In this document: positions 2,361-28,800 of the stretch, one piece after another | Position numbering within the stretch: position 1 is the first letter of the stretch | Layout of the letters: each line of letters begins with the position of its first letter | NCBI GenBank assembly: GCA_044892505.1 | Contig: CM097882.1 | Span: forward strand, 172,422,001 to 172,486,000 | Origin: Schmidtea nova | Lineage: Eukaryota | DNA: 64,000 bases | Reading direction: 5' to 3' | Made by a program: the position numbers and the translations under genes | The notes under the pieces: model-generated | The model's input: the letters and a program-made list of their open reading frames with translations, nothing else | The model's database searches: none | What the model was told of the DNA's origin: nothing

Positions 2361-2993
2361 AGTGCAAAAGAATTTTATCGCATGTTTGGACCTGAACTGA
2401 AAAATATTACTGGTGAAAGTCAAACTTTAGATGATGTTTTGTTGCTTGTCGACAGTTTATTTCAAAATTTGAAAAATGAAGTAAAACTCAAAAAAAAGAA
2501 TGAGAAAATAAACATAATTTCCTAACTTCAGGATTGTCCAACACCTTTTCATCAGAAAAACGCTAAGAGTTGGAATAAAGTAAAAGATGACTATTTGCAA
2601 CAAGTAGAAAACATAGACTCGAAAGGAAAGAAATTCATAAACGATTATTTCAGTCATATTCACAGTGCAAATAGTGCATTTGATTTATTAGAAAAATTCA
2701 AATCAATCCAAGCCAGACCAGCAATTTCAGTATTATTAGATGAAAAGTATATGGACGTTCTTCGAAGTTTTGGAAAAGAAGTAAACATTATTTTTTTTGT
2801 TTAAGATAACACAATTTCAAATTCTAGTTGGTTAAAGTTGATTTACTATTTTCGGAATATGCAGATAATCCTCGAATCAGTAGGTATATGCCACCATTAA
2901 GTGGATCTATTGTATGGGCTCGATTGATCTTGAAGATAATGAAAACTCCAGTATTGAGGTTCATTAATGTTAAACCATTAATTTTTGATACAG
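2361..2993 (+). CDS. DNAH10: Dynein heavy chain exons (2361-2480, 2532-2780, 2828-~2993)
   Basis: SAKEFYRMFGPELKNITGE...; SANSAFDLLEKFKSIQARPAI; PPLSGSIVWAR; introns of 51 and 47 nt. Confidence 0.92.
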
Positions 2994-5900: not shown

Positions 5901-8900
5901 TATACCAACAACTAGAATTGCCTCAACTATGGTATTACACACGCATAAATAAAAATGATATCGAAAAAAATATTATATATTACAAAATATATGAAAATAT
6001 AAATGGGGTAAGATTGACCCCTTTGCAGAGACCATGCAAAATTTACTATGCACAGACTGAAGGTTAACAGGGAATGAATACAGGATTTTTTGAATAGAAT
6101 TTTTCCTATCGGATTTTTGAACTTTGTAACTTCAATTGTATACCAAAATAACTTAATTCAAATTAAGGGTTTGCTGCCGATTGAATATGTGCATAATTAT
6201 TAAATTTCATTTTTTGGCGTAATATAGTTAATTATTGACGGCAATAAACGTAAGTTAATTCAAAATTATATTTTTCAGGCTCTTTCTACAGTGGAAACGA
6301 GATTATACGACTTAGAGAAATGTGATAAACAGGTTGAAAAAACTTTATCTCGATTGAAGAAAGTCAACCTATTCAAAAGAAAAGCTGCATATACTGAAGG
6401 CTATATTCCTTCAGCAAAAGTAAATTAAAAATATTAACATAAAAATACAATAATTAACATTTAGGATTTTATAGATTATGCTGAACAATCTAGAGAAAAT
6501 GAGTGTGAAATGCTCGCTCCCAAAATTAACAATGAATTATACAGTATATTCCAAAGATTAGAGGAAAGTTTATATAACACTAAAACTGGTGAATGTGTGT
6601 TGATGAATGAACTTTATTACAGATATGAAACTGAGTTATCTAAAGCCCTGAGTAATGTAAGTAAAAAAGTATTTAACTTTATCTTTCAAATCAGGAAAAT
6701 GTTAAACAATGGGATTTCAGAATCTTCTGAAAGTAGAAATGTAATTAGAGGCTTTAAAATTCAATTCATTATATTTGTTCTACTAGATCAGTCGTTCCAA
6801 AAGTGTGGATCTCGAACCGGCTTAATATGGGTCGTCAAAAATTTTAATATTTAGTTATCCGTATTAATTGTGTGCATATTAATTTGATTTTAATTAATTT
6901 GCTGCAATTCAAAAGTAGATGTCAAAGATGTTACAGCCAAAAATAGAAAGCAAGCTCATTCATCTCATGCATTCTCTTGATTATGCTTAAATATGTGCTT
7001 GTAAGGAAAGAAAGATTTGGTGTCACGTTTTTCCTTCCGGGATTACAGAATTACAAATATTAAAATATTTATTTAAAAATAATTTATTTTGAATTGTACC
7101 CAAATTTTGTTACTTTTTCGAAATTTATATTAATCTTACCAGTTACTGCCGGATCTGCAGAAGATTTTTCTCAAGATTGAAAATAATAAAAAAATACTTG
7201 AGATTTAATATTGGTCAAGAACAATGGACTTTTTGCCATTTATCTTTTGAATCCAAATTAACGAGAAAAAAATTATGATGATATTATCAACGAATTTGCT
7301 ATAAAACATAAGAGAATGAAACAAAAATCACATGTTGTAATTAGGGTTTGAAATACCAAAAATCTCCAAATATACTTTCGAAATTTCACAGGTAAAATAA
7401 ATTTATTTTACCGGAAAATGTAATTTTTGAATATAAATTCAATCTTTTTTTATATTTTTTTTACAAAAATCACATGTTATAATCTTGTTCTATTAAATCT
7501 CATACAAAATTGTATTTTATAAGTATATTGTCTTATAACCATTTCATTGGTTTTCCCTGTCTATGTCTTCCGCTTCTGGCAATCTACGCGGTTTTCCACA
7601 ATATTCTTGACCTTTTTTCATTAATATTTAAATTTAAATTTAAATTTGCATATAAATGTTTTTTACTTATACGGACTGACACAAATCTCTATACAGTTCA
7701 TTGATTAACAATTCCTTACCTTTACTTACTCTTTTTCCTTCATTTTACTTGAAACCGTTCATTGCCAAAATCTTCGTTTTATTATTTTCTTATGTAGTGT
7801 CTTCGTGAATCATCTAGCACTGATTGCATGTGGTGTAATTATTCCTCGATAAAGCATCCGCATTTGCATGTAACTTTTCTTTGATGGTATTCTAAATTTA
7901 TATTCAATTCACTTAATTAATTTATCCATGTCTTAAATTGCGCAGTAATGATTTCTTTGTCCTAATCATAAATGTTATCGCTTTATGGTCAGTTCTCAAC
8001 GTGAATCTTTTTCCAAATAAATAATGCTTGAAATACTGAATGGAGTAATAAATTGCCAGAAATTCTTTTCCGGTACTGCAATATCCAATTTCATGTTTAT
8101 TCATTGTCTTTTATTAATAAGTAATCACTTGTTCCTGTTCTTTGTAATTTATCTGTGATAATACTTCACCAATTGTGTCGAAACTAACATCCGTGTCTAA
8201 AATAAAATCATTTCGGAAATCCGGAAATCTCATTTCGGAGTAAATATTAACATCATTTTTAATGTTTTGAAAATTGCTTCACGTTCTTCTGTTCATATCA
8301 GCTTGTCTTTATTTGACACTTTTTTGTGGTCTTGCAAATTTTGCATTATCTCTGGCAAACTTCCTATAATAATTCGTCAATTAAAAAAACCACTTCTCAA
8401 TCGTTTGATAAAAATTTGGTTTTATGTGTTCTTGCATTGCTTTAATTTTTTCGTCATCTGTCTTTATACCGAATTTAGTTATATTATGTCCTAAAGATTT
8501 GATCTTTTATTTATTAAAATAACATTTTTCGGGCCTATTTTTAGTCCAGTTTCTTTAATTTTTTGAAGAACTGTTTCCAATAGTTTTCTGTGCTCTTATT
8601 TATTACAAATTTAAAAAAATCATCAAGGTAAACCGCTGCTTTTTTCCATATAATAGCACCCAACATTTCGGTTATTAGTTTTTGAAAAGTAGCTGGTGCA
8701 GCTTCGATTCCAAAAGGCATGCGGATGAAACAATGTTGTTCATCTTTTGTAGAAAAAGCTGTTTTAAGTTTCGATTCTTTCTCTAGTTCCACTTGATTAT
8801 ATACATTACCAAATCAGTAGTACTAAAGACTTAGGTGTCACTAAGTATATCCATCATTTCTTCGATATTTGGAATGGGAAACCGATGTATTTCTGTTATT

Positions 8901-10630
8901 ACATTTAATACCCGGAAATCTAAACATATTCTTATATCTTACTTGTTTTTCTCTAAAAATACATACTAATAGACTATTCCATACTAAATCACAATATTTT
9001 TAATTTCTGCTTTTCCATATTTTTTGACAGTTCTTGAATTTTATGCGCTTCGTGTATAGATTGACGCCTAGGATTAATAGTATCTGGATTTCCATTTGTA
9101 GCTATTTTGTGTTTAATTAGAGTCGTATTTTCAACATTCAATTTGTGTTTCAAAAAAACTTTCGAATACTTATAAATTAAATTTCTATTGTGAGGTCGAT
9201 ATTTCCTTGTATATTACTTTTTTCCAAACTCATTATTTGAGGTACTTTTTTATGCGACTGTTAATTTAAGTCAGAACATTCATCATTTCTACTCCACCAA
9301 TTGTCACAAAAGACCCATTAACTAGTTCCATTTCCGATAGTCGTACATTCTTTTTTCATTGTTATTGTATCGACCATTTTTCACTATTGACGCGTAAGTA
9401 GGTAGATAAGTGGAGCCGGGAACAAAGACATTATGACTCATTGCGTGGGCGGGGAAAAAAGAACAAAGACACCCCCCTCCCCTCCCCCCCGGGGGGGGGA
9501 GGGGGGTAGAAATTTTTTTTGATGACTCATCGATGACTCATCGATGACTCATCATTTTTATGACTCATCGATGACTCATTTCAAATTTGAATTTTATGAC
9601 GTCATCGATGACTCATTTCAAATTCAAATTTTAAATTTGAATTTCCAAAGGTTAAATAAGGTCAAACCTTCAAACAAGGGTATTATTCGAAAGGTCTTGG
9701 AGAGGTCTATACAATGGTCATAACCTCGAAGGTTTATGGAGGGTCTTTAACCTTCAAAGGGTGCAAAACCTTCAACCTTTTTCAATCCTTATAATATATA
9801 TATCATTCGAAAGGTATTTAAGAGGTAGGTATGTTGGTCATACCTTCGAAGGTTTATGTAGGGTCTTTAACCTTCAAAGGGTGCAAAACCTTCAACTTTT
9901 TTCAAACCTTATAAAATATATATATCATTCGAAAGGTATTTGAGAGGTAGGTATGTTGGTCATACCCTTGAAGGTCTATGGTGGGTGCTCAACCTTCAAA
10001 GGGTCCAAAACCTTCAACCTTTTTCAATCCTTATAATATATATATCATTCGAAAGGTATTTGAGAGGTAGGTATGCTGGTCATACCCTCGAAGGTCTATG
10101 GTGGGTGCTCAACCTTCAAAGGGTCCAAAACCTTCAACCTTTTTCAATCCTTATAATATATATATCATTCGAAAGGTATTTGAGAGGTAGGTATGCTGGT
10201 CATACCCTCGAAGGTCTATGGTGGGTGCTCAACCTTCAAAGGGTGCAAAACCTTCAACCTTTTTCAAACCTTATAATATATATATCATTCGAAAGGTATT
10301 TGAGAAGTAGGTATGCTGGTCATACCCTCGAAGGTCTATGGTGGGTGCTCAACCTTCAAAGGGTCCAAAACATTTAACGTTTTTTAAAGCTTGTGTGTAA
10401 TATATCAAACAAAAGGTAACTGAGATGTGCACACAATGGTCATACCCTCGAAGGTTTATGGTGGGTGCTCAACCTTCAAAGGGTGCAAAACCTTCAAAAA
10501 ATTTTAAACATTACAAGTTATATATCAAACACAGGGTAATTGAGATGTGCACACAATGGTCATACCCTCGAAGGCCTATGGTGGGTGCTAAACCTTCAAG
10601 GGGTCAAAAACCTTCAAATCTTTTCAAACC

Positions 10631-10711
<81 letters not shown>

Positions 10712-13700
10712 AACAAAAGGTAATTGAGAGTTGAGTATGATGGTCAACCCTCGAAGGGTCCAAGGTTCAAAATTTTTAAAACTATGTAATATATGTATCA
10801 AACAAAAGGTAATTGATAAATGAGTTTAATGGACATACCATTGAAGGTGGGTGGTCGACCCTCGAAGGGTCCAAGGTTCAAAATTTATAAAACTATGTAA
10901 TATATGTATCAAACAAAAGGTAACACTTTGCAACACATGTGCAACATTAACAAAGACATTGCAATCCACATGCAACGTAAACAAAGACATTTCTTTGCCA
11001 AATTTCATAATAAAGACATTTCATTGAAAAATTTCATAACAAAGACACTTCAATGCCAAAAAACTAAACAAAGACATTTCATTGCAAAATTTCATAACAA
11101 AGACATTTCAATGCCAAATTTCATAACAAAGACACAACAATGCCAAATTTCATAACAAAGACATTTCAATGCCAAAAAACTAAACAAAGACATTTCATTG
11201 CAAAATTTCATAACAAAGACATTTCAATGCCAAAAAACTAAACAAAGACATTTCATTGCAAAATTTCATAACAAAGACATTTCAATGCCAAAAAACTAAA
11301 CAAAGACATTTCATTGAAAAATTTCATAACAAAGACATTTCATTGCCAAAAACTAAACAAAGACATTTCATTGCCAAATTTCATAACAAAGACATTTCAT
11401 TGCCAAATTTCATAACAAAGACATTTCAATGCCAAAAAAAAAAAAAACTAAACAAAGACATTTCATTAGCAAATTTCATAACAAAGACATTTCATTGCAA
11501 AATTTCATAACAAAGACAATTCATTGCCAAAAACTAAACAAAGACATTTCATTGCCAAATTTCATAACAAAGACATTTCATTGCAAAATTTCATAACAAA
11601 GACATTTCAATGCCAAATTTCATAACAAAGACATTTAAATGCCAAAAAACTAAACAAAGACATTTCATTGCAAAATTTCATAACAAAGACAATTCATTAC
11701 CAAAAAATTAAACAAAGACATTTCATTGCCAAATTTCATAACAAAGACATTTCATTGCCAAATTTCATAACAAAGACATTTCATTGCAAAACACCTAAAC
11801 AAAGACATATCAATACCAAAATAACTAAACAGAGACACGAACATTTACTAGCAGAACATTTACTATCAGAACATCTTTTGTGATGGTTTTTATCTGCCAA
11901 AGCTTATTACTCGAACATTAATTACAATTCAACTTCATTCAGCATCATTTGATAAAACAAAGACATATCATTGTCAAAACACCTTAACAAAGACATTACA
12001 GTACCCATGCATTGTAAGCAACATACTAACAAAGACATTACAGTACCCATGCAGTGTAAGCAACATGCTTACAAAGACATTGCAATACAGATGCAAGTTA
12101 ACAAAGACATTGCAAAACATATGCAAGTTAACAAAGACATTGCAATGCAGATACTAGTTAACAAATNNNNNNNNNNNNNNNNNNNNNNNNNNNNNNNNNN
12201 NNNNNNNNNNNNNNNNNNNNNNNNNNNNNNNNNNNNNNNNNNNNNNNNNNNNNNNNNNNNNNNNNNNNNNNNNNNNNNNNNNNNNNNNNNNNNNNNNNNN
12301 NNNNNNNNNNNNNNNNNNNNNNNNNNNNNNNNNNNNNNNNNNNNNNNNNNNNNNNNNNNNNNNNNNNNNNNNNNNNNNNNNNNNNNNNNNNNNNNNNNNN
12401 NNNNNNNNNNNNNNNNNNNNNNNNNNNNNNNNNNNNNNNNNNNNNNNNAAACAGAGACATTGTATATCCAAAACAATACATATGCAAGTTAACAAAGACA
12501 TTGCAATACATATGCAAGTTAACAAAGACATTGCAATACATATGCAAGTTAACAAAGACATTGCAATACATATGCAAGTTAACAAAGACATTGCAATACA
12601 TATGCAAGTTAACAAAGACATTGCAATACATATGCAAGTTAACAAAGACATTGCAATACATATGCAAGTTAACAAAGACATTGCAATACATATGCAAGTT
12701 AACAAAGACATTGCAATACATATGCAAGTTAACAAAGACATTGCAATGTGGATACAAGTTAACAAAGACATACATGCAAGTTAATAAAAAATATTCAAAA
12801 ATATTCAAAATTATTCAAGAGTTCAAAATTTTTTAAAACTATATAAATATCATGCGAAAGATATTTGAGATGTGTGTTTGTATATGTTTTCAAACCTTCA
12901 AGATGTCAAAATAAAATAATTAAACTACCACAACGTAATATATATTTATTTTCCTACCTATTTTGACGCTGCAATTCATGTGCAATACTAACAAAGACAT
13001 TGCAAAACAGATGCAAGTTAACAAAGACATTGCAGTTGCAAGCCAAGTTAACAAAGACAAGATGTCAAAAAAAGACTAATTATTATTAATCACAAAGTGC
13101 ATTATCTTAGCCAATGATAAAAATAAATTAAATGAAAATACATATATTTTTGTACGACATTATATGTATATCACATGATATTCATCAATATTAATACCAC
13201 AAGACTCACACTTATCAATATTTTTTAAACATTTTGAACAAATAATGACATGTCCACAAGGTAAATATAAAATGCCAACTCTATTTATATTACATATTGA
13301 ACATGTGAGAAATCTTTGTTTGATTTCTTTCAATTTCTTGGTTACATTTACCTCTAAAATATCCACATTCAGCATGAAAGTTCGAATAATAGTACGATAT
13401 TTTCCAAGTCGAAATTCCATACATGACCAGAAAATGGTATTCAAATTGAATTCAGTAGAATCGATATCATTAAGAATCATAAAAAAACTGGATAATTTCA
13501 TCATGGATTTATCATATCCGAATGATTCTGTTAAACCAATAATTAATTTATTATTGAAGGATTTGAATAATTTTGAAAGAATGTCGATATCGCATTTCTC
13601 AATCGATGTTAAAAGGTCATCAAGTATTAAAAATGATTGGATCCAATTGTCCAAAGTAATGAAATTATCTGTAACCTAGTTTAAAATAATTAATTTAAAT

Positions 13701-14286
13701 ATATATATATATATATATATATTTTTAAAACTAACTTTATTTGTTTCTTTATTTGTTACTTTATTCATTTTCATCAATCAATACTATTTACAAGTTGTAT
13801 TTATATTGCAAAAATCAACCAATTTAATAACCAACCAATGATTGAAAGTTTTGCTAAACTGTTACATTGAAATGATGATAAGTGACATTGAAAATTAGGT
13901 AACAATATATTTATTATTAGAAATATGTTCAAGTAATGAGCTTTTGCACATAAAAACCATCACAGAATAGGTTCTGCTACTAGGGTTCTGCTCGCAATGT
14001 TCTGCTACTAAATGTTCTGTCACTATGACAAATACATGAAAAATTATCATACTATTGAGATAATCATACAAATTATTCTTAAATTATAGTACAAATATAT
14101 CAAAAATATTTGAAATATACATTACATACTTGAAATATTATCACAAAGTATCATTACATACATGAAATATCTTCATGCTATTGGACAAAATATATACAAA
14201 ATATCATCATACTGCAATTACATCGAAAATCACCAAAATTATACACAAAATATGAAAAGTACATAGAAATTCGTCACATACAAAAA

Positions 14287-14345
<59 letters not shown>

Positions 14346-15299
14346 CAAAAATACATACAAAATACATAGAAATCTATCACATATGTACAAAATATCATCA
14401 TACTATAGTGAATAAATATACATACAAAATATCAGAAATACAAACATACATAAAATTTCATCTTACTATAGTTTGATAACATAGAAATACTTGAAATATC
14501 CACAAAATACAGAAACTAACCAAGATATATATATATATATAGTCATCATACATACAAAATATCACATATAAGAAATATCATTACAGATTATCACATGCAT
14601 GTAATATTATTATTATTATAGTGCAAATTCCATAGAAAATAACAAAGGGACATGAAATATCATCACAAAATTATAGGAAATTTCCACACATTAGAAATAC
14701 ATACAATATTAATCAAAAAAGAATATTATCATACCAGTGCAAAATTATTACATTGCACAAAAGGTTATCATATATATGAAATATTATTATACTTTTATGT
14801 AAAGTACAAAGAAAAATACAAACATATACACAAAATATACACAAAATATATCATCATACTATAATTTAACAGTAATAAATACTCACAAAATATCAAAGAT
14901 TTACAAACAAAATACACAAAAGATTATAATATTATTGTTTGATAACATAAAAATACATTGAAATACATAGAAAATTATTAAAATACATACATGAAATAAT
15001 ATTACACAAAAGGTTATAACATACATGAAATATCTACATACAAAATATCAAAAGTACATAGAGATAAATCCTATACGCAAAAGATATCATTACATATATG
15101 AAATATTATGACAAAATATCTTTACATAGATGAAATATCATCATACTTTAATGAAAATACAGACAAAATATTATCATGCTATATTCCAAATACACTTAAT
15201 ATTAAAAAGAAATATCATACATACATACACAAAGGATATCATTCACATGAAAAGTTGTCATGTTATAGTCAAAAGCATGAATTATTATCATACTAGTGT

Positions 15300-15369
<70 letters not shown>

Positions 15370-18300
15370 CAAATAATGTATCATACATACAAAGGATATC
15401 ATTACAAAGTATCATTACATACATTAAATATCATCACACTATAGTACAATTAAATAGATAATCATCAAAAAATATACAGAAATTAAATCAAATTCACAAC
15501 AATATTCATTAGAAATATCTACATACTTGTGCAATTACATAATAAATATCAAAATTATATGAAATATCATCACATATGACATATTATCATACATACACAA
15601 AGGATATAATATCACATACTTAGAAAATTATTATCACATACAAAATATCAAAAGTTCATTACACATGCAAAATATAATTACATATATCATTATACTATAA
15701 TTTAACAGTAATAAATGTTTAACTAATGAGCTTTTGCACATAAAAACCATCACAAAAGATGTTCTGCTACTAGGGTTCTGTTCGCAATGTTTTGCTAGCA
15801 ATGTTCTGCTACTGAATAAATTTGATGAAAATGTAACAATGTATTATGAATGAAAATAAATATTTCAAACATTACAGTAATTTCTACTTTAAAATGAGGT
15901 TGAATGCATGAAATGTCATCATACTATAGTGCAAATACATGAAATACTCTTTAAATACATGACTTTAGATGCATCAAATATTATCTTACTATAGTTTGAT
16001 AACATAGAAAAAATATATAGAAATCATCAAAATTATACAAAATATTAAAAATAGATTATATTAAATATCATCACAAAGTACATAGAAAATCATAAAAATA
16101 CACAGAAATTCATCAAATCCACAACAATAATCATTAAAGAAATATCTACATACTAGTGTAATTACATAACAAAATATCTGAAAATATATGTTATATCATC
16201 ACAAATATGAAATATTATCATATACAAAGGATATAATCACATACAAAAGTTCATTACACGTACAAAATATACTATCATATATCAACATACCTTAATGTAA
16301 CAGTAATAATTGTTCAAGTAATGAGCTGTTGCACATAAAAACCATCACAAAAGATGTTCTGATACTAGGGTTCTGCTACTAAATGTTCTGCTAGTTATGT
16401 TATGCTACAGTATAAAATTAATGAAAGTTATATGAATGGAAATAAATGTTTCAAACATTACAGTAAATTCTACTTTAAAATGAGGTTGAATGCATGAAAT
16501 ATCGTCATACTATAGTGCAAATACATTAAAATACTCACAAAATGATATTAGATACATCAAATATTATCTTACTGTAGTTTGATAACATATTAAAAATAGA
16601 TCATATAAAATTTCATCACAAAATACATAGATATTCATGTACAAATTATCACAAAAAAAAGAAAAAAATACAAACATACACAAAATATTATCACAAAATA
16701 TCACAAATACATTAGAAATACATATCAAATATATATATGAAATGTCATCACAAAGTATCATTAAATATATGAAATATCATAATTCTATAGCGTAATTACA
16801 AGAAAATATCCACAAATTCTCACAAATACTATGAAATTTATCAAAAATACATTGAAATTCATCAAAAATACATTGAAATTCATCAAACAAGAAATATTCA
16901 CATAATAATTGTCATTAAAAGAGTATCAGTAATTGTAATATACTTTCACAATTTGCCTGTTACATTGATCGAAGCTCATATGCTAATGATTGTTATTTTA
17001 GTACATGTGTGAATAATAAGCTTTTGCACATAAAAACCATCACAAAAGATGTTCTGTTACTAAAGGTTCTGTTCGAAATGTTCGGCTAGTGGATAAATTT
17101 AATGAAAATTATACGAGTGACAATAATTTGTTAGAGTAAATTCTACATTAAAATGAGGAAAACCAATAGAGAAAATATTAATTGGTGAAAATATTAGAAC
17201 AAATGATGCTGAATGAATTGCAATAAATGTTCGAGTAATAAGCTTTAGCAGATAAAAACCATCACAGAATAGGTTCTGATACTAAATGTTCTGTTCGCAA
17301 TGTTCTGCTAGCATGAAATTAATATAATAATAATAAAATGATAGTCTGTGACAAAATAAAATGTTGAAATAGTTATTGGAAATATATAGTCTGTAACAAA
17401 AATGTGAAATAATTATTGGAAATATATAGTCTGTGACAAAATAATTATTGGAAATACGCACGAAAATAAATTAAAATAATATCAAACTGTACATCATAGT
17501 TTTAATTTCTTGTAAAAAACAAAGCAAGTTATCAAAATTCATGTTCTAAATAAAATTTTACAATTTAAAATACCACAACGTAAAATATTTATAAAGTACC
17601 ACAACGTAATAAAAGCTGGTATATATCTATTACAATTTTATAAGTAATTCATTTTTAACTATGAACTGTCAACAATATAATGATAATAAAGTTAATGAAC
17701 CTATTTCAATAAATGGAGTTTCGATGCCTGAAAGTCCTAAACTTTCAAGAAAACTTTCAAGTAAATTTATATTTATTTTTTATAAAGTTATTATTATAAT
17801 ATTTATTAGAAAAATATAAAGAAATCAAGAGTCCAATTGAAGAATTGCAGAACATAATAAATTCTTACTTGGACTCCAAAGAACGATTAATTATCAAGCT
17901 TCGAAAAAAGAACATTCAGATAATCAAGTTGAAAATAGAAAATGAAAGAAATTGAATGAAATCCAAGAATCGAAAGATGATCAATAAAATATTTTTAATA
18001 GTTTTTTAGTTATTTTTTCTTCTATAACATTTGAGTTAAAATTTTATTAGTATAGTTGTTGTTGTATTAAATAATAAACATGTTAAGTAAATAATCTTTT
18101 TCAATGTATAGTAAAGCTATCGAGTTTTTGTTATATCATCCTATTTAAAATTTTATTAGTATAGTTGTTATATTAAATAATAAACATGTAAAGTAAATAA
18201 CCTTTTTGAATGTATAGATACAATATTTATAGTAAAGCTATTGATGACATATATGAATATTTAAAGATATGAAGAGGTAAAATAATAAATGTCATACTTC

Positions 18301-20722
18301 AGACCATATTTTTAATCTTGCGATGAAATTATTAAAAAGCTTGAATATGTTATGATGGATATGTTTCTTAGGATATCTTGCTTGATACTTTGTTTTTAAA
18401 CATCTGACAAAATCCCCTAAATTATTATTTATATCTCAAATGAATTACTTATAAAATTGTAATAGATATATACCAGCTTTTATTACGTTGTGGTACTTTA
18501 TAAATATTTTACGTTGTGGTATTTTAAATTGTAAAATTTTATTTAGAACATGAATTTTGATAACTTGCTTTGTTTTTTACAAGAAATTAAAACTATGATG
18601 TACAGTTTGATATTATTTTAATTTATTTTCGTGCGTATTTCCAATAATTATTTTGTCACAGACTATATATTTCCAATAATTATTTCACATTTTTGTTACA
18701 GACTATATATTTCCAATAACTATTTCAACATTTTATTTTGTCACAGACTATCATTTTATTATTATTATATTAATTTCATGCTAGCAGAACATTGCGAACA
18801 GAACATTTAGTATCAGAACCTATTCTGTGATGGTTTTTATCTGCTAAAGCTTATTACTCGAACATTTATTGCAATTCATTCAGCATCATTTGTTCTAATA
18901 TTTTCACCAATTAATATTTTCTCTATTGGTTTTCCTCATTTTAATGTAGAATTTACTCTAACAAATTATTGTCACTCGTATAATTTTCATTAAATTTATC
19001 CACTAGCCGAACATTTCGAACAGAACCTTTAGTAACAGAACATCTTTTGTGATGGTTTTTATGTGCAAAAGCTTATTATTCACACATGTACTAAAATAAC
19101 AATCATTAGCATATGAGCTTCGATCAATGTAACAGGCAAATTGTGAAAGTATATTACAATTACTGATACTCTTTTAATGACAATTATTATGTGAATATTT
19201 CTTGTTTGATGAATTTCAATGTATTTTTGATGAATTTCAATGTATTTTTGATAAATTTCATAGTATTTGTGAGAATTTGTGGATATTTTCTTGTAATTAC
19301 GCTATAGAATTATGATATTTCATATATTTAATGATACTTTGTGATGACATTTCATATATATATTTGATATGTATTTCTAATGTATTTGTGATATTTTGTG
19401 ATAATATTTTGTGTATGTTTGTATTTTTTTCTTTTTTTTGTGATAATTTGTACATGAATATCTATGTATTTTGTGATGAAATTTTATATGATCTATTTTT
19501 AATATGTTATCAAACTACAGTAAGATAATATTTGATGTATCTAATATCATTTTGTGAGTATTTTAATGTATTTGCACTATAGTATGACGATATTTCATGC
19601 ATTCAACCTCATTTTAAAGTAGAATTTACTGTAATGTTTGAAACATTTATTTCCATTCATATAACTTTCATTAATTTTATACTGTAGCATAACATAACTA
19701 GCAGAACATTTAGTAGCAGAACCCTAGTATCAGAACATCTTTTGTGATGGTTTTTATGTGCAACAGCTCATTACTTGAACAATTATTACTGTTACATTAA
19801 GGTATGTTGATATATGATAGTATATTTTGTACGTGTAATGAACTTTTGTATGTGATTATATCCTTTGTATATGATAATATTTCATATTTGTGATGATATA
19901 ACATATATTTTCAGATATTTTGTTATGTAATTACACTAGTATGTAGATATTTCTTTAATGATTATTGTTGTGGATTTGATGAATTTCTGTGTATTTTTAT
20001 GATTTTCTATGTACTTTGTGATGATATTTAATATAATCTATTTTTAATATTTTGTATAATTTTGATGATTTCTATATATTTTTTCTATGTTATCAAACTA
20101 TAGTAAGATAATATTTGATGCATCTAAAGTCATGTATTTAAAGAGTATTTCATGTATTTGCACTATAGTATGATGACATTTCATGCATTCAACCTCATTT
20201 TAAAGTAGAAATTACTGTAATGTTTGAAATATTTATTTTCATTCATAATACATTGTTACATTTTCATCAAATTTATTCAGTAGCAGAACATTGCTAGCAA
20301 AACATTGCGAACAGAACCCTAGTAGCAGAACATCTTTTGTGATGGTTTTTATGTGCAAAAGCTCATTAGTTAAACATTTATTACTGTTAAATTATAGTAT
20401 AATGATATATGTAATTATATTTTGCATGTGTAATGAACTTTTGATATTTTGTATGTGATAATAATTTTCTAAGTATGTGATATTATATCCTTTGTGTATG
20501 TATGATAATATGTCATATGTGATGATATTTCATATAATTTTGATATTTATTATGTAATTGCACAAGTATGTAGATATTTCTAATGAATATTGTTGTGAAT
20601 TTGATTTAATTTCTGTATATTTTTTGATGATTATCTATTTAATTGTACTATAGTGTGATGATATTTAATGTATGTAATGATACTTTGTAATGATATCCTT
20701 TGTATGTATGATACATTATTTG

Positions 20723-20812
<90 letters not shown>

Positions 20813-21766
20813 ACACTAGTATGATAATAATTCATGCTTTTGACTATAACATGACAACTTTTCATGTGAATGATATCCTTTGTGTATGTATGTATGATAT
20901 TTCTTTTTAATATTAAGTGTATTTGGAATATAGCATGATAATATTTTGTCTGTATTTTCATTAAAGTATGATGATATTTCATCTATGTAAAGATATTTTG
21001 TCATAATATTTCATATATGTAATGATATCTTTTGCGTATAGGATTTATCTCTATGTACTTTTGATATTTTGTATGTAGATATTTCATGTATGTTATAACC
21101 TTTTGTGTAATATTATTTCATGTATGTATTTTAATAATTTTCTATGTATTTCAATGTATTTTTATGTTATCAAACAATAATATTATAATCTTTTGTGTAT
21201 TTTGTTTGTAAATCTTTGATATTTTGTGAGTATTTATTACTGTTAAATTATAGTATGATGATATATTTTGTGTATATTTTGTGTATATGTTTGTATTTTT
21301 CTTTGTACTTTACATAAAAGTATAATAATATTTCATATATATGATAACCTTTTGTGCAATGTAATAATTTTGCACTGGTATGATAATATTCTTTTTTGAT
21401 TAATATTGTATGTATTTCTAATGTGTGGAAATTTCCTATAATTTTGTGATGATATTTCATGTCCCTTTGTTATTTTCTATGGAATTTGCACTATAATAAT
21501 AATAATATTACATGCATGTGATAATCTGTAATGATATTTCTTATATGTGATATTTTGTATGTATGATGACTATATATATATATATATCTTGGTTAGTTTC
21601 TGTATTTTGTGGATATTTCAAGTATTTCTATGTTATCAAACTATAGTAAGATGAAATTTTATGTATGTTTGTATTTCTGATATTTTGTATGTATATTTAT
21701 TCACTATAGTATGATGATATTTTGTACATATGTGATAGATTTCTATGTATTTTGTATGTATTTTTG

Positions 21767-21807
<41 letters not shown>

Positions 21808-24800
21808 TTTTTGTATGTGACGAATTTCTATGTACTTTTCATATTTTGTGTATAATTTTGGTGATTTTCGATGTAATTGCAGTATGATGATATTTTGTAT
21901 ATATTTTGTCCAATAGCATGAAGATATTTCATGTATGTAATGATACTTTGTGATAATATTTCAAGTATGTAATGTATATTTCAAATATTTTTGATATATT
22001 TGTACTATAATTTAAGAATAATTTGTATGATTATCTCAATAGTATGATAATTTTTCATGTATTTGTCATAGTGACAGAACATTTAGTAGCAGAACATTGC
22101 GAGCAGAACCCTAGTAGCAGAACCTATTCTGTGATGGTTTTTATGTGCAAAAGCTCATTACTTGAACATATTTCTAATAATAAATATATTGTTACCTAAT
22201 TTTCAATGTCACTTATCATCATTTCAATGTAACAGTTTAGCAAAACTTTCAATCATTGGTTGGTTATTAAATTGGTTGATTTTTGCAATATAAATACAAC
22301 TTGTAAATAGTATTGATTGATGAAAATGAATAAAGTAACAAATAAAGAAACAAATAAAGTTAGTTTTAAAAATATATATATATATATATATATATTTAAA
22401 TTAATTATTTTAAACTAGGTTACAGATAATTTCATTACTTTGGACAATTGGATATAATCATTTTTAATACTTGATGACCTTTTAACATCGATTGAGAAAT
22501 GCGATATCGACATTCTTTCAAAATTATTCAAATCCTTCAATAATAAATTAATTATTGGTTTAACAGAATCATTCGGATATGATAAATCCATGATGAAATT
22601 ATCCAGTTTTTTTATGATTCTTAATGATATCGATTCTACTGAATTCAATTTGAATACCATTTTCTGGTCATGTATGGAATTTCGACTTGGAAAATATCGT
22701 ACTATTATTCGAACTTTCATGCTGAATGTGGATATTTTAGAGGTAAATGTAACCAAGAAATTGGAAGAAATCAAACAAAGATTTCTCACATGTTCAATAT
22801 GTAATATAAATAGAGTTGGCATTTTATATTTACCTTGTGGACATGTCATTATTTGTTCAAAATGTTTAAAAAATATTGATAAGTGTGAGTCTTGTGGTAT
22901 TAATATTGATGAATATCATGTGATATACATATAATGTCGTACAAAAATATATGTATTTTCATTTAATTTATTTTTATCATTGGCTAAGATAATGCACTTT
23001 GTGATTAATAATAATTAGTCTTTTTTTGACATCTTGTCTTTGTTAACTTGGCTTGCAACTGCAATGTCTTTGTTAACTTGCATCTGTTTTGCAATGTCTT
23101 TGTTAGTATTGCACATGAATTGCAGCGTCAAAATAGGTAGGAAAATAAATATATATTACGTTGTGGTAGTTTAATTATTTTATTTTGACATCTTGAAGGT
23201 TTGAAAACATATACAAACACACATCTCAAATATCTTTCGCATGATATTTATATAGTTTTAAAAATTTTTGAACTCTTGAATAATTTTGAATATTTTTGAA
23301 TATTTTTTATTAACTTGCATGTATGTCTTTGTTAACTTGTATCCACATTGCAATGTCTTTGTTAACTTGCATATGTATTGCAATGTCTTTGTTAACTTGC
23401 ATATGTATTGCAATGTCTTTGTTAACATGCATATGTATTGCAATGTCTTTGTTAACTTGCATATGTATTGCAATGTCTTTGTTAACTTGCATATGTATTG
23501 CAATGTCTTTGTTAACTTGCATATGTATTGTTTTGGATATACAATGTCTCTGTTTNNNNNNNNNNNNNNNNNNNNNNNNNNNNNNNNNNNNNNNNNNNNN
23601 NNNNNNNNNNNNNNNNNNNNNNNNNNNNNNNNNNNNNNNNNNNNNNNNNNNNNNNNNNNNNNNNNNNNNNNNNNNNNNNNNNNNNNNNNNNNNNNNNNNN
23701 NNNNNNNNNNNNNNNNNNNNNNNNNNNNNNNNNNNNNNNNNNNNNNNNNNNNNNNNNNNNNNNNNNNNNNNNNNNNNNNNNNNNNNNNNNNNNNNNNNNN
23801 NNNNNNNNNNNNNNNNNNNNNNNNNNNNNNNNNNNNNNNNNNNNNNNNNNNNNNNNNNNNNNNNNNNNNNNNNNNNNNNNNNNNNNNNNNNNNNNNNNNN
23901 NNNNNNNNNNNNNNNNNNNNNNNNNNNNNNNNNNNNNNNNNNNNNNNNNNNNNNNNNNNNNNNNNNNNNNNNNNNNNNATTTGTTAACTTGCATATGTAT
24001 TGCAATGTCTTTGTTAACTTGCATATGTATTGCAATGTCTTTGTTAACTTGCATCTGTATTGCAATGTCTTTGTAAGCATGTTGCTTACACTGCATGGGT
24101 ACTGTAATGTCTTTGTTAGTATGTTGCTTACAATGCATGGGTACTGTAATGTCTTTGTTAAGGTGTTTTGACAATGATATGTCTTTGTTTTATCAAATGA
24201 TGCTGAATGAAGTTGAATTGTAATTAATGTTCGAGTAATAAGCTTTGGCAGATAAAAACCATCACAAAAGATGTTCTGATAGTAAATGTTCTGCTAGTAA
24301 ATGTTCGTGTCTCTGTTTAGTTATTTTGGTATTGATATGTCTTTGTTTAGGTGTTTTGCAATGAAATGTCTTTGTTATGAAATTTGGCAATGAAATGTCT
24401 TTGTTATGAAATTTGGCAATGAAATGTCTTTGTTTAGTTTTTTGGTAATGAATTGTCTTTGTTATGAAATTTTGCAATGAAATGTCTTTGTTTAGTTTTT
24501 TGGCATTGAAATGTCTTTGTTATGAAATTTGGCATTGAAATGTCTTTGTTATGAAATTTTGCAATGAAATGTCTTTGTTATGAAATTTGGCAATGAAATG
24601 TCTTTGTTTAGTTTTTGGCAATGAATTGTCTTTGTTATGAAATTTTGCAATGAAATGTCTTTGTTATGAAATTTTGCAATGAAATGTCTTTGTTTAGTTT
24701 TTTGGCATTGAAATGTCTTTGTTATGAAATTTTGCAATGAAATGTCTTTGTTTAGTTTTTTGGCATTGAAATGTCTTTGTTATGAAATTTGGCATTGTTG

Positions 24801-25223
24801 TGTCTTTGTTATGAAATTTGGCATTGAAATGTCTTTGTTATGAAATTTTGCAATGAAATGTCTTTGTTTAGTTTTTTGGCATTGAAGTGTCTTTGTTATG
24901 AAATTTTTCAATGAAATGTCTTTATTATGAAATTTGGCAAAGAAATGTCTTTGTTTACGTTGCATGTGGATTGCAATGTCTTTGTTAATGTTGCACATGT
25001 GTTGCAAAGTGTTACCTTTTGTTTGATACATATATTACATAGTTTTATAAATTTTGAACCTTGGACCCTTCGAGGGTCGACCACCCACCTTCAATGGTAT
25101 GTCCATTAAACTCATTTATCAATTACCTTTTGTTTGATACATATATTACATAGTTTTAAAAATTTTGAACCTTGGACCCTTCGAGGGTTGACCATCATAC
25201 TCAACTCTCAATTACCTTTTGTT

Positions 25224-25290
<67 letters not shown>

Positions 25291-25753
25291 GGTTTGAAAA
25301 GATTTGAAGGTTTTTGACCCCTTGAAGGTTTAGCACCCACCATAGACCTTCGAGGGTATGACCATTGTGTGCACATCTCAATTACCCTTTGTTTGATATA
25401 TAACTTGTAATGTTTAAAATTTTTTGAAGGTTTTGCACCCTTTGAAGGTTGAGCACCCACCATAAACCTTCGAGGGTATGACCATTGTGTGCACATCTCA
25501 GTTACCTTTTGTTTGATATATTACACACAAGCTTTAAAAAACGTTGAATGTTTTGGACCCTTTGAAGGTTGAGCACCCACCATTGACCTTCGAGGGTATG
25601 ACCAGCATACCTACTTCTCAAATACCTTTCGAATGATATATATATTATAAGGTTTGAAAAAGGTTGAAGGTTTTGCACCCTTTGAAGGTTGAGCACCCGC
25701 CATAGACCTTCGAGGGTATGACCAGCATACCTACCTCTCAAATACCTTTCGAA

Positions 25754-25803
<50 letters not shown>

Positions 25804-28800
25804 ATATTATAAGGTTTGAAAAAGGTTGAAGGTTTTGCACCCTTTGAAGGTTGAGCACCCACCATAGACCTTCGAGGGTATGACTAGCATACCTACCTCT
25901 CAAATACCTTTCGAATGATATATATATATTATAAGGATTGAAAAAGGTTGAAGGTTTTGGACCCTTTGAAGGTTGAGCACCCACCATAGACCTTCAAGGG
26001 TATGACCAACATACCTACCTCTCAAATACCTTTCGAATGATATATATATATATATTATAAGGTTTGAAAAAAGTTGAAGGTTTTGCACCCTTTGAAGGTT
26101 AAAGACCCTCCATAAACCTTCGAAGGTATGACCAACATACCTACCTCTTAAATACCTTTCGAATGATATATATATTATAAGGATTGAAAAAGGTTGAAGG
26201 TTTTGCACCCTTTGAAGGTTAAAGACCCTCCATAAACCTTCGAGGTTATGACCATTGTATAGACCTCTCCAAGACCTTTCGAATGATACCCTTGTTTGAA
26301 GGTTTGACCTAATTTAACCTTTGGAAATTCAAATTTAATATTTGAATTTGAAATGAGTCATCGATGACGTCATAAAATTCAAATTTGAAATGAGTCATCG
26401 ATGAGTCATAAAAATGATGAGTCATCGATGAGTCATCGATGAGTCGTAAAATGATGAGTCATCGATGAGTCATCGATGAGTCATAAAATGATGAGTCATC
26501 GATGAGTCATCAAAAAATTTTCTTCCCCCTCCCCCCTCCCCCCGGGGGGAGGGGGAGGGGGGTGTCTTTGTTCTTTTTTTCCCCGCCCACGCAATGAGTC
26601 ATAATGTCTTTGTTCCCGGCTCCACACATCTACCTACTCGCGTAAGAGGTATTTCCAATGGCTGAAACTTGTTGAATCTTTGATTTATCTTCATCCATTT
26701 TCTGTAAAATTATTTTAATATTTTTATTTGCCATTGGACCTTTCTGTACTGATTCTCCATCATTTCTTAAATCTTCTTTCAAAAATTTTTACTTTCAGTA
26801 AATCTTCCGTCATTTCATATCTTTTTATATCACGTTTTGCTTCTTCATTATCAAGACAGTGCTTTAGGAAGAATGTTGTCAAATTTGACATTGTTAGCTT
26901 GTGCTTCAGAATTTTCTGAAAACCTTTCTCAATTTTACTGATCTAAGTTTCTGCATCATCTGCTCTTTTTTAACTCTTTCTATTAACTTCCAATTTCTGT
27001 TTGTTTTCTTGTCAAACTTTGGATCGATTTTTAACCCACTTCCCGATATCCAATCGATCTGATAGACTCGTGGTGGCCCACAAATTATTCCATTGAAAAA
27101 TTGAAAAATTTGAAAAATTTTGAAAAGTTTTGAAACAATGTGATTTTTTAATTTACTGTTGCCAAGAAACTACCAAACAATGAAACAACAAAAAAATTAA
27201 CCGAAAACATGAGAAAAAGAAAGAGTTACATTAAAAACTTGTTTTTATGGGTTCCTTTTTTTCGATAATTTAGCAAATTTTCCAAATCCTTAGCTAAATC
27301 CTGGTTTTCTTCGAATGCTAATCTAAGCCTTTTCGCATAATCTTCTTCATCTGGAATCTTATTATATTTGTTGTGGACCTTTCTTTGACTATTGTCTAGC
27401 TGAATAATTAAAAAAATATGCTTTAATCTTCTCAATAAACTGTTCCTAATCGTCTCAATTGAATAGATTTTCGCTTGTAAGAGAATATGTAATAATACCT
27501 GAGTTGAAAGCGTTGTCATGAATTATTGTTACGTAATATACTAATTAATTTATTAATTTACTTATTCCTTAATTACATGAAGCAATTATTTTTGTTTTTT
27601 AATTAATTAACGATTTTTTGTGTGATTTAAATGGTAATCTTATTAAAATAATTTAATTTTTATCATTTCCATGTACTCCTTTCTATACCAATTTGTGCTA
27701 TGTAATAAATGACAAAATACAGTAAAGTATTATCTTGTAAGAAATTTATTTCAAGACTCGCAAGTCAACTTTCCACTGAGTTTATTTTGTTCAGGCTGGA
27801 CCTGGTTAGCCTAGGCATCACACACAGGCTAAAATATCTGATAAAATACGCTCACAAATGCACAAAGCAAGACAAAACAAAGTTAAATAACAAAATACGC
27901 CTTTGCTCCAAAATCTTTTTATTAAGTGAAAATTTTCTATTATAAAATAATCCTTATTAATCCATTAAGTTAAAAATATTAAAATGGAAAAAAAATTTAT
28001 TGAGATAATGTCTAAAATAGTATAATTTATCTATAATGTGATGAGTTGCCACGATACTGAATTGTCTGTTATGAATAATCATGCGATGAACTGTCATGGA
28101 ATCAATTAAATACAAACAAGATAATACCGTATAACGATGAATACAGCCTCTTATAATATAAAATGAAATTATACTAACAAAGAATAAAAACTTTATTATG
28201 TGGCAGACAAAAATGATAGAAAAAAATTGTAAACCACAAAACAGTATTATATAATAGAAACTGCATACAAACTGTTAATGGGTGTAAATTTAATCAATCA
28301 ATAAAAACAAATAATAAATTTTAAACACAAAAAAGTTGTTATCTTTATTTTAATTATTTTTATCGATTTTTAAAATGAAACCAATTTTAAAAGCAAAATC
28401 TTTGAAAAAAATATTTTTCAAGAGAGCATATTGTAAGATTTATTTTTTATTTAATAATTAATTAAAATTTTTATAGCAATTCCGATATTTCTGATGGATT
28501 AACGTTAAATTTTCGGGTAAATAATCAGTAAAATTTGTAAACATTATTTATTAATATATAATTAAATCAAAATTTTCATAGTATCATTTAATGAAAGACA
28601 ATTAAGTTCTGCAGTGCTTGATTTACAAAGAAAAACTAGTAAAACGTAGATTTTATTGACTAAAATTAAAAAAAATTATTGTAATAGAATTTCAGAGGCT
28701 GACAAAGCCAAAATTGCCAATGCCACGGAAAATGGGGAGGGTTACCTACAATTTGGAATACTGTTAAGAATCTCAAAAAACACAATTAAATCAATAATAT

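What the first reader, a model, noticed from the sequence alone, without database searches (positions are those of the whole stretch)
9397..26638. 17-kb near-perfect palindrome with Maverick/Polinton ends and 6-bp TSD but no Maverick core genes
Seen: ends AGTAGGTAGAT...ATCTACCTACT, flanked by CGCGTA on both sides; the arms (~8.26 and ~8.20 kb) make up ~95% of the element around a 783-bp spacer. Established: Polintons have 5'-AG...CT-3' ends with short AG/AGT-type repeats, 6-bp TSDs from a retroviral-like integrase, and TIRs usually no more than ~1 kb; they encode pPolB, integrase, ATPase and capsids. None of these is visible here. Inference: a non-autonomous 'all-TIR' Maverick derivative, mobilised in trans, carrying its own spliced cargo genes and enhancer-like arrays. 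As ssDNA it would fold into an 8-kb stem with a 0.8-kb loop, an extreme form of the proposed racket replication intermediate. This may be an undescribed satellite-element class.
Basis: partly seen in the sequence, partly recalled or inferred. Interest (0 to 1): 0.92.

Follow-up and report, generated by a model that had tools for sequence, protein, structure and literature searches.

The report
17-kb foldback transposon, Maverick-like ends
A 17-kb piece of mobile DNA in a dynein-gene intron is almost entirely two mirror-image 8-kb arms built of repeat arrays: a giant version of the known 'foldback' style of defective transposon, with ends that fit, but do not prove, dependence on Maverick/Polinton elements.

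Summary
Element 9397-26638 (17,242 bp) has 11-bp perfect ends (AGTAGGTAGAT / ATCTACCTACT) and is flanked by CGCGTA on both sides. It has nominal arms of 8,258 and 8,201 bp around a 783-bp loop. Both N gaps lie at mirrored, identical edges inside the same 30-bp array, so true arm lengths are unknown.

The arms are nested tandem arrays:
- An 11-bp palindromic TGACTCA array, then 120-, 29/58- and 30/42-bp arrays, then degenerate ~640-bp modules.
- An orientation-locked 11-mer, AACAAAGACAT, occurs 76 times and nowhere else in the window.

Each arm carries one outward-facing IAP-type RING E3 gene; the right copy has one premature stop. No polymerase, integrase, ATPase or capsid domain is detectable.

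I read it as a single-unit insertion of a non-autonomous, foldback-type TIR element in an intron of an axonemal dynein heavy-chain gene. The 6-bp duplication and the AGT-type AG...CT ends match published Maverick ends. However, only one copy is available, no partner element could be examined, and an 8-kb TIR is far outside the Maverick range.

Assembly inflation of the palindrome and a different superfamily remain open. It is a new variant of a known kind, of moderate interest.

The parts
9391..9396 (.). Left copy of the flanking direct repeat CGCGTA (target-site duplication)
26639..26644 (.). Right copy of the flanking direct repeat CGCGTA
9397..26638 (.). Whole element, 17,242 bp including two N gaps
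9397..17654 (+). Left arm (nominal 8,258 bp, 282 of them N)
18438..26638 (-). Right arm (nominal 8,201 bp, 423 of them N), the reverse complement of the left arm
9397..9517 (+). Terminal unique domain. It holds the 11-bp perfect end with a short period-4 reiteration, the first two copies of the AACAAAGACA motif, a GGGCGGGG box, and a C-run/G-run hairpin with a 17-bp stem. Its mirror is at 26512-26638.
9518..9633 (+). Array of 11-bp palindromic units GATGACTCATC plus one TGACGTCA site (37-bp super-unit). The mirror copy at 26340-26515 is 63 nt longer.
9681..10645 (+). 120-bp tandem array, about 8 units. The mirror is at 25276-26288, which has an extra internal (AT)n.
10980..11837 (+). 29/58-bp tandem array carrying the AACAAAGACAT motif once per 29 bp. 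The mirror at 24325-24987 is 210 nt shorter.
11985..12771 (+). 42-bp and 30-bp arrays carrying the same motif, interrupted by N gap 12167-12448. The mirror is at 23323-24160, interrupted by N gap 23556-23978.
13160..13774 (-). Left RING gene, read outward toward the left end. The main exon is 13160-13675 (171 codons plus stop, IAP-type C3HC4 RING at the C-terminus, helical N-terminal domain). A candidate 13-codon first exon lies at 13736-13774, and the 60-nt GT-AG interval at 13676-13735.
22320..22934 (+). Right RING gene copy, read outward toward the right end. It is broken: 3 nucleotide differences from the left copy, giving 1 premature stop and 1 other residue change.
13925..17332 (+). Inner arm, about 20% G+C: degenerate direct repeats of a ~640-bp module, with a conserved 85-95-bp core present five times and no protein-family match. 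The mirror is at 18760-22169.
17655..18437 (+). Unique loop of 783 bp. It has a 52-codon ORF at 17661-17819 with no family match and a possible GT-AG interval (unsupported), plus an 89-bp direct repeat at 18023-18111 / 18132-18217.

Best explanation
This is one insertion event of a non-autonomous DNA transposon of foldback architecture. [quoted passage not shown]

Shown: it lies in an intron of a + strand axonemal dynein heavy-chain gene, bounded by a 6-bp target-site duplication.

Inferred: it was integrated by an enzyme supplied in trans that makes 6-bp staggered cuts and recognises the AGTAG... ends. Of the described superfamilies, a Maverick/Polinton-type (retroviral-like, rve) integrase fits best; I put that sub-claim at about 0.4.

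Inferred: the orientation-locked AACAAAGACAT motif is the likeliest recognition site for a trans-acting protein, as in other foldback elements whose arrays multiply binding sites. It starts 25 nt from each end and is repeated about 40-50 times per arm.

Inferred: the arms grew by array expansion and by taking an IAP-type RING E3 gene into the repeat, and they are kept alike by arm-to-arm conversion.

Inferred: read-through transcription of such a palindrome would give hairpin RNA, so the locus may also feed small-RNA silencing.
For: - Matching ends and 6-bp flank repeat with different unique flanks on the two sides.
- Three separately assembled contigs support the topology, and the outer arms differ in array copy number, so they are not one contig placed twice.
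- Arms built of nested arrays and degenerate modules.
- The motif occurs 76 times: 43 in the left arm, all on the + strand, and 33 in the right arm, all on the - strand. There are none elsewhere, against 0.13 expected.
- All ORF pieces are negative for protein families except the RING.
- Collinear dynein exons lie on both sides.
- Published Maverick ends are (AGT)2//(ACT)2 or (AG)3//(CT)3 with 6-bp duplications (PMC8097293).
- Other 6-bp or integrase-type superfamilies have different ends: TA..TA for IS3EU/GingerRoot (PMC10045372), and TGTNR with 4-bp duplications for Ginger (PMC2836005).
- Polintons with ~2-kb gene-bearing TIRs are reported (bioRxiv 10.1101/2025.02.07.637071).
- The foldback structure is known to evolve independently in different superfamilies, and its arrays can carry extra transposase-binding sites (PMC4079207).
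Against: - Only one copy is available.
- No other copy, empty site or autonomous partner was found in any collection I could reach.
- Both N gaps sit at mirrored identical edges, and the central contig is itself a near-perfect palindrome, as expected if reads of the two arms were pooled.
- The TIR length is about 6 times the largest reported for vertebrate Mavericks.
- The end matches (AGT)2 only 5/6.
- The flank repeat can be read as 8 bp if the ends are allowed to be unequal by 2 nt. That would point to hAT or Mutator/foldback-type enzymes.
- Nothing shows that the repeated motif binds a protein.
Confidence: 0.55

Rival explanations
1. Assembly artefact. A real TIR element is inserted here, but the 8-kb extent of the palindrome is inflated or created by the assembler. 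Either a fold-back central contig was built, or one repeat contig's reads were used for both arms. The true element would then have much shorter inverted repeats or a different interior.
For: - The window has ten N runs, so it is a scaffold of short contigs.
- The two gaps in the element have identical mirrored edges.
- The central contig 12449-23555 is 99.9% self-complementary, while the flank-anchored outer arms are ten times more diverged.
Against: - Both outer contigs independently join unique flank to about 2.7 kb of arm with the same array order.
- The inner arms still differ at 5 bases and 2 microsatellites, so they are not a literal copy.
- The loop joins arm sequence on both of its sides.
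- No alternative path is visible in the window.
Confidence: 0.15
2. A one-off snap-back derivative. The palindrome arose in a single event, when a polymerase copying one end of a conventional linear or TIR element switched strands. This produced end-interior-loop-interior'-end', which was then integrated once. It is a defective by-product, not a propagating family.
For: - The inner arms are nearly identical (5 differences in 5.1 kb), suggesting recent origin.
- There is a single short unique loop.
- Only one copy was seen.
- Strand-switch products with long inverted repeats are known for protein-primed replicons (my own knowledge, not tested here).
Against: - The arm contains no remnant of any replication, integration or capsid gene that a parent element's end region might be expected to carry.
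- The array-of-arrays build is what gradual TIR elongation gives in foldback elements.
- The outer arms are about 1% diverged with several array-length differences.
Confidence: 0.15
3. It is a foldback-type element of another superfamily, for example Mutator/foldback or hAT if the duplication is really 8 bp, or an undescribed integrase-type family. On this reading the resemblance to Maverick ends is coincidental.
For: - Most described foldback elements are assigned to Mutator (PMC4079207).
- The direct repeat can be extended to 8 bp (CGCGTAAG).
- Agreement with the Maverick end motif covers only a handful of bases.
Against: - The 8-bp reading needs ends unequal by 2 nt, and the extra AG match has roughly a 5% chance expectation in this base composition.
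- The symmetric reading gives exactly 6 bp.
- The ends are not TA..TA (IS3EU/GingerRoot) nor TGTNR (Ginger).
Confidence: 0.2

Closest known systems
Foldback-type transposons (Drosophila FB, Tetris, Galileo, nematode Tm1)
   Same: Long terminal inverted repeats form most of the element and are built of tandem sub-repeats. The central loop is short, there is no transposase gene, and the two arms differ in array copy number. A repeated short motif in the arrays could act as extra binding sites (PMC4079207; titles).
   Different: - Those families have 7-10-bp duplications and belong to Mutator or P.
- Here the symmetric reading gives 6 bp and AG...CT ends.
- The arms are far longer (about 8 kb), and each carries a protein-coding gene.
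Maverick/Polinton elements, including butterfly polintons with ~2-kb gene-bearing TIRs
   Same: 6-bp target-site duplication, AG...CT ends of AGT type, a total length (17 kb) within the usual 12.7-24.6 kb, and genes duplicated inside the inverted repeats in some polintons (PMC8097293; bioRxiv 10.1101/2025.02.07.637071).
   Different: - No protein-primed polymerase, integrase, ATPase, protease or capsid genes.
- The TIR is 8 kb against 46-1,447 bp.
- The arms are non-coding arrays.
- No partner element was seen.
IS3EU/GingerRoot and Ginger1/Ginger2 (integrase-type cut-and-paste transposons)
   Same: Integrase-related enzymes giving short duplications. IS3EU/GingerRoot gives 6 bp (PMC10045372).
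   Different: Their ends are TA..TA (IS3EU/GingerRoot) or TGTNR with 4-5-bp duplications (Ginger; PMC2836005). Their TIRs are 40-270 bp.
Viral and cellular IAP-type RING E3 ligases (for the cargo gene only)
   Same: The C-terminal RING matches cIAP2/XIAP RINGs by sequence (E about 1e-8) and by fold (TM to target 0.82-0.87). Viral IAP/RING proteins top the viral fold library.
   Different: - There is no BIR domain.
- The 120-residue helical N-terminal domain (pLDDT 92.6) has no structural match.
- Full-length relatives are few (9 representatives at E<1e-10) and known only from short metagenome contigs.

Membership tests
Maverick/Polinton | 6-bp target-site duplication | tested here: met
   CGCGTA on both sides with symmetric ends. 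An 8-bp reading with unequal ends cannot be excluded from one copy.
Maverick/Polinton | 5'-AG...CT-3' ends with a short terminal reiteration, (AGT)2 or (AG)3 | tested here: inconclusive
   The ends are AGTAGG.../...CCTACT, matching (AGT)2 at 5 of 6 positions, with a period-4 reiteration. This is too few bases to be decisive.
Maverick/Polinton | Encodes protein-primed family B polymerase and rve integrase (required by definition for autonomous members) | tested here: not met
   No such domain in any ORF piece of arms or loop. It can only be a non-autonomous dependant.
Maverick/Polinton | Capsid, packaging ATPase and protease module | tested here: not met
Maverick/Polinton | TIRs of tens of bp to about 1.4 kb | tested here: not met
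   Arms of about 8 kb against 46-1,447 bp. About 2 kb is reported in butterflies.
Maverick/Polinton (non-autonomous member, Repbase rule) | Same duplication length and ends aligning at positions 1-11 (at most 1 mismatch) with an autonomous element | not testable with these tools
   The rule is from PMC4455052. The host genome is not in any reachable collection.
Foldback architecture (structural class) | Long TIRs forming most of the element, made of tandem sub-repeats, with a short loop and no transposase | tested here: met
Mutator/FB superfamily | 8-10-bp target-site duplication | tested here: not met
   6 bp under the symmetric reading. 8 bp is possible only with ends unequal by 2 nt.
IS3EU/GingerRoot | 6-bp duplication with TA..TA ends | tested here: not met
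   The duplication length fits, but the ends are AG..CT.
Ginger1/Ginger2 | 4-5-bp duplication and TGTNR ends | tested here: not met
Any transposon family | More than one copy at different sites with different duplications | not testable with these tools
   There is no second copy in the window, none in viral contigs, and only unrelated hits in metagenome contigs.

The most novel reading that the evidence does not exclude
The element represents a propagating family of 'all-TIR' satellites of Mavericks: foldback-type elements that keep only Maverick ends plus arrays of a binding motif. They would be integrated (and perhaps copied) by a resident Maverick's enzymes, and would carry an IAP-type RING E3 gene and transcription-factor-site arrays of their own. 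This would extend the foldback route of TIR elongation to the virus-like Maverick lineage.
Probability: 0.15. Interest if true: 0.8.

Novelty: new variant of a known kind. Interest (0 to 1): 0.5.

Why it matters
If the palindrome is real, it is among the longest inverted repeats reported for a transposon-like insertion that has an intact target-site duplication. It would show that foldback-style TIR elongation can reach 8 kb per arm and can engulf a functional-looking gene.

If the Maverick link held, it would be the first foldback-type dependant of a virus-like self-synthesising element. It would also give a sequence handle, the repeated 11-mer, for asking what those elements recognise at their ends.

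A near-perfect 8-kb palindrome inside a dynein-gene intron is also a potential source of hairpin RNA and of genome instability.

If the palindrome is instead an assembly product, the value is a warning for scans of scaffolded assemblies.

Tried and rejected
1. Looking for other copies or the host genome:
- The window's RING and RT proteins are not on record.
- The RT's best relatives are only about 30% identical, so the host genome is not in the collections.
- The terminal 29-mer is absent from viral contigs.
- A three-motif array pattern gave 0 viral hits and 4 metagenome hits. None of the four has any similarity to the element, and their G+C is 38-51%.
- A full-text search for the end sequences gave only unrelated primer matches.

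2. Context of RING relatives:
- P0001 has no contig.
- P0033, P0034 and P0050 sit on contigs of about 1 kb with nothing informative.
- P0038 lies next to a large retroelement polyprotein and an exonuclease.
- P0044 is followed by a Pox_A32-type ATPase. This is a weak hint of a virus-like setting, not a Maverick link.
- The IMG/VR hits match the RING only. One of them is a giant-virus fragment with a true BIR+RING IAP. I rejected these as evidence.
- A profile search found no named member.

3. Empty-site inference from a nested insertion: the flanks have no uninterrupted counterpart in the window.

4. Ginger, IS3EU/GingerRoot, LTR-type ends, hAT and Mutator were each considered and set aside on ends or duplication length, with the 8-bp caveat.

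Slips, declared as required:
- Early in my reasoning I guessed at the place and kind of the premature stop in the right-arm RING copy. I did not verify, print or repeat it.
- One search printed the coordinates of array-length differences between the arms. These are non-coding repeats, not gene breaks.
Full report
**1. Observation**

The element runs from 9397 to 26638 (17,242 bp). Its first and last 11 bases are perfectly complementary (AGTAGGTAGAT / ATCTACCTACT). After 2 mismatches the complementarity resumes and continues inward. CGCGTA lies immediately outside both ends. With the boundaries fixed by the inverted repeat, a 6-bp match has a chance probability of about 6e-4. The unique sequences beyond the two copies are unrelated to each other. 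A simple fold-back of one flank is therefore excluded.

**2. Arms**

- The inner arms (12564-17654 and 23530-18438) are 99.16% identical over 5,111 columns. They differ by 5 substitutions and two (AT)n length differences.
- The loop is 17655-18437, 783 bp.
- The outer arms (2,770 and 2,660 read bases) are 98.98% identical over aligned columns. They have 26 substitutions and 10 indel events, the largest being 63, 42 and 210 nt of tandem-array copy number.
- The outer arms are thus about ten times more diverged than the inner ones. I cannot tell whether this reflects conversion acting from the centre, faster change in arrays, or pooled-read consensus in the central contig.

**3. Gaps (tested first, as asked)**

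The window has ten N runs, so it is a scaffold. The two runs inside the element (12167-12448, 23556-23978) both interrupt the same 30-bp array, and their edges are the same sequence in mirror image. No credible gene crosses them. Phase and continuity cannot be established, and I did not try to fill them.

The consequence is that arm lengths are nominal. The structure rests on three contigs: two outer ones, each tying unique flank to about 2.7 kb of arm, and a central one that is itself a palindrome. This is the main reason to keep an assembly artefact alive as a rival.

**4. Anatomy of an arm, from the end inward**

- A 120-bp unique terminal domain with a GGGCGGGG box and a C-run/G-run hairpin (17-bp stem; z = -4.1 against shuffles).
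- An array of the 11-bp palindrome GATGACTCATC with one TGACGTCA site. These are the core sequences bound by bZIP factors of the AP-1/ATF type (my knowledge; function untested). The unit occurs 3 and 6 times in the two arms and nowhere else.
- A 120-bp array of about 8 units, then a (TA)n run.
- A 29/58-bp array, then 42- and 30-bp arrays.
- The RING gene.
- About 3.4 kb of 20% G+C degenerate direct repeats of a ~640-bp module, with a conserved 85-95-bp core present five times.

One 11-mer, AACAAAGACAT, links the terminal domain (25 nt from the end) with the 29-, 42- and 30-bp arrays. It occurs 43 times in the left arm, all on the + strand, and 33 times in the right arm, all on the - strand. 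It occurs nowhere else in 46.7 kb, against 0.13 expected. Such an orientation-locked sub-terminal motif is what transposase-binding repeats look like in other families. That it binds anything here is inference.

**5. Coding content**

Every ORF piece of arms and loop was scanned against Pfam. Only one gives a match: a 171-codon piece (13163-13675, minus strand) ending in an IAP-type C3HC4 RING.

- Its best solved relatives are cIAP2 and XIAP RINGs (E about 1e-8).
- The predicted structure is confident (pLDDT 92.6). The RING superposes on those RINGs. The 120-residue helical N-terminal domain matches nothing in the PDB or the viral library.
- The closest relative, P0001 (51% identity), aligns from the very first residue of this piece and continues 22 residues upstream.
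- In the window, a 13-codon ATG-started piece lies 60 nt upstream, separated by an interval that starts with GT and ends with AG. A two-exon gene is therefore likely.
- Both copies point outward. The right copy has three base differences, giving one premature stop and one other residue change.
- Full-length relatives are rare: 9 representatives at E<1e-10 among 1.8 billion. They come only from short, A+T-rich metagenome contigs. One is followed by a Pox_A32-type ATPase, a weak hint of a viral setting.
- The loop has a 52-codon ORF without matches.
- No polymerase, integrase, ATPase, protease or capsid domain is present.

**6. Setting**

Collinear + strand exons of an axonemal dynein heavy chain lie on both sides of the element:

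- DHC_N1 positions 280-357 at 2526-2801.
- DHC_N2 positions 25-403 between 40229 and 61035.
- The best solved match is DNAH10.

The element is therefore intronic, in a stretch rich in other mobile DNA. That includes a gypsy-like RT fragment just to its left, a retroelement with an RT ORF, and a mariner-type transposase. The genome is A+T-rich (20-37% G+C) and uses the standard stop codons. I could not identify the organism.

**7. What it is**

The matching ends, the flank duplication and the different flanks show a single-unit insertion of a TIR element. The lack of any enzyme makes it non-autonomous. Its build is the foldback architecture: long inverted repeats made of nested arrays, a short loop, and arms that differ in array copy number. 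That architecture is known from Drosophila FB, Tetris and Galileo and is thought to arise independently in different superfamilies by loss of the transposase and elongation of the TIRs (PMC4079207).

What is unusual is the scale (about 8 kb per arm), the gene inside each arm, and the duplication length.

**8. Which enzyme**

- Published Maverick features are 6-bp duplications, end motifs (AGT)2//(ACT)2 or (AG)3//(CT)3, TIRs of 46-1,447 bp and eight core genes (PMC8097293).
- This element meets the first feature, resembles the second at 5 of 6 positions, and fails the last two.
- The other families with 6-bp or integrase-type duplications have TA..TA ends (IS3EU/GingerRoot, PMC10045372) or TGTNR ends with 4-5 bp (Ginger, PMC2836005).
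- Polintons whose ~2-kb TIRs contain genes have been reported, so TIR growth over genes is not foreign to that lineage.
- Repbase files a non-autonomous element with a superfamily only if duplication length and terminal positions 1-11 agree with an autonomous member (PMC4455052). I could not run that test.
- The direct repeat can also be read as 8 bp if the two ends are allowed to differ by 2 nt, which would point to hAT or Mutator-type enzymes. The extra two-base match has roughly a 5% chance expectation.

I therefore rate 'moved by a Maverick-type integrase' at about 0.4. It is the best single candidate, but unproven.

**9. Rivals**

- Assembly inflation of the palindrome: 0.15.
- A one-off snap-back product of a conventional element: 0.15.
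- A foldback element of another superfamily: 0.2.

These partly overlap with the main reading, whose core (a real, single-unit, non-autonomous foldback-type insertion) I put at 0.55.

**10. Searches that led nowhere, and slips**

Searches that led nowhere are listed under Tried and rejected.

Slips are declared there too. One is a virus end motif recalled from memory in my reasoning only. One is an early unverified guess in my reasoning about the stop in the right RING copy. The third is that one search printed the coordinates of non-coding array-length differences.

**11. Verdict**

- It is a new variant of a known kind (foldback-type non-autonomous element) with Maverick-compatible ends.
- Interest is moderate (0.5). 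It would be high only if a census shows a family sharing ends with resident Mavericks.

Noticed in passing
window 2526-2801, 40229-40465, 54483-54728, 56392-56897, 60781-61035 (+): Collinear exons of an axonemal dynein heavy chain span the window (DHC_N1 then DHC_N2; best solved match DNAH10 residues ~1572-1650). Introns are tens of kb long and full of mobile DNA.
   Followed up: partly
window 3298-4011: Small palindrome: arms of at least 94 nt at 99% identity around a ~500-nt loop. The loop holds a GIY-YIG nuclease ORF (3365-3853). The palindrome abuts N gap 2994-3297 and may be part of a Penelope-like element.
   Followed up: partly
window 32740-33642: Second small palindrome: 385-nt arms at 95% identity and a 133-nt loop, with the complementarity continuing a few bases beyond. 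ORF pieces on both strands read alike. It is not similar to the first small palindrome or to the 17-kb element.
   Followed up: partly
window 26966-27271; 39760-40039; 57820-58122: A ~300-bp dispersed repeat (85% identity) just right of the element, with two inverted copies further on. It is probably a short non-autonomous element.
   Followed up: no
window 48170-53545 (+): Retroelement block with a 554-codon RVT_1 ORF whose closest relatives are R2-like and only about 30% identical. It is followed directly by a mariner-type transposase ORF (52712-53545).
   Followed up: partly
window 8544-9213 (-): Gypsy-like reverse-transcriptase fragment immediately left of the insertion site. I could not show that the element interrupts it.
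   Followed up: partly
L008:91-1209: On a 1.2-kb, 30% G+C metagenome contig, a distant full-length relative of the RING protein (P0044) is followed 28 nt later by a Pox_A32-type packaging ATPase (26.4 bits, above the family cut-off). This hints that the small RING family also lives in virus-like genomes.
   Followed up: partly
window 12564-17654 vs 18438-23530, and 9397-12166 vs 23979-26638: Arm-to-arm divergence is about 0.1% in the inner 5.1 kb but about 1% in the outer 2.7 kb. Three of the five inner substitutions fall in the 601-nt RING gene region. Both observations are unexplained.
   Followed up: partly
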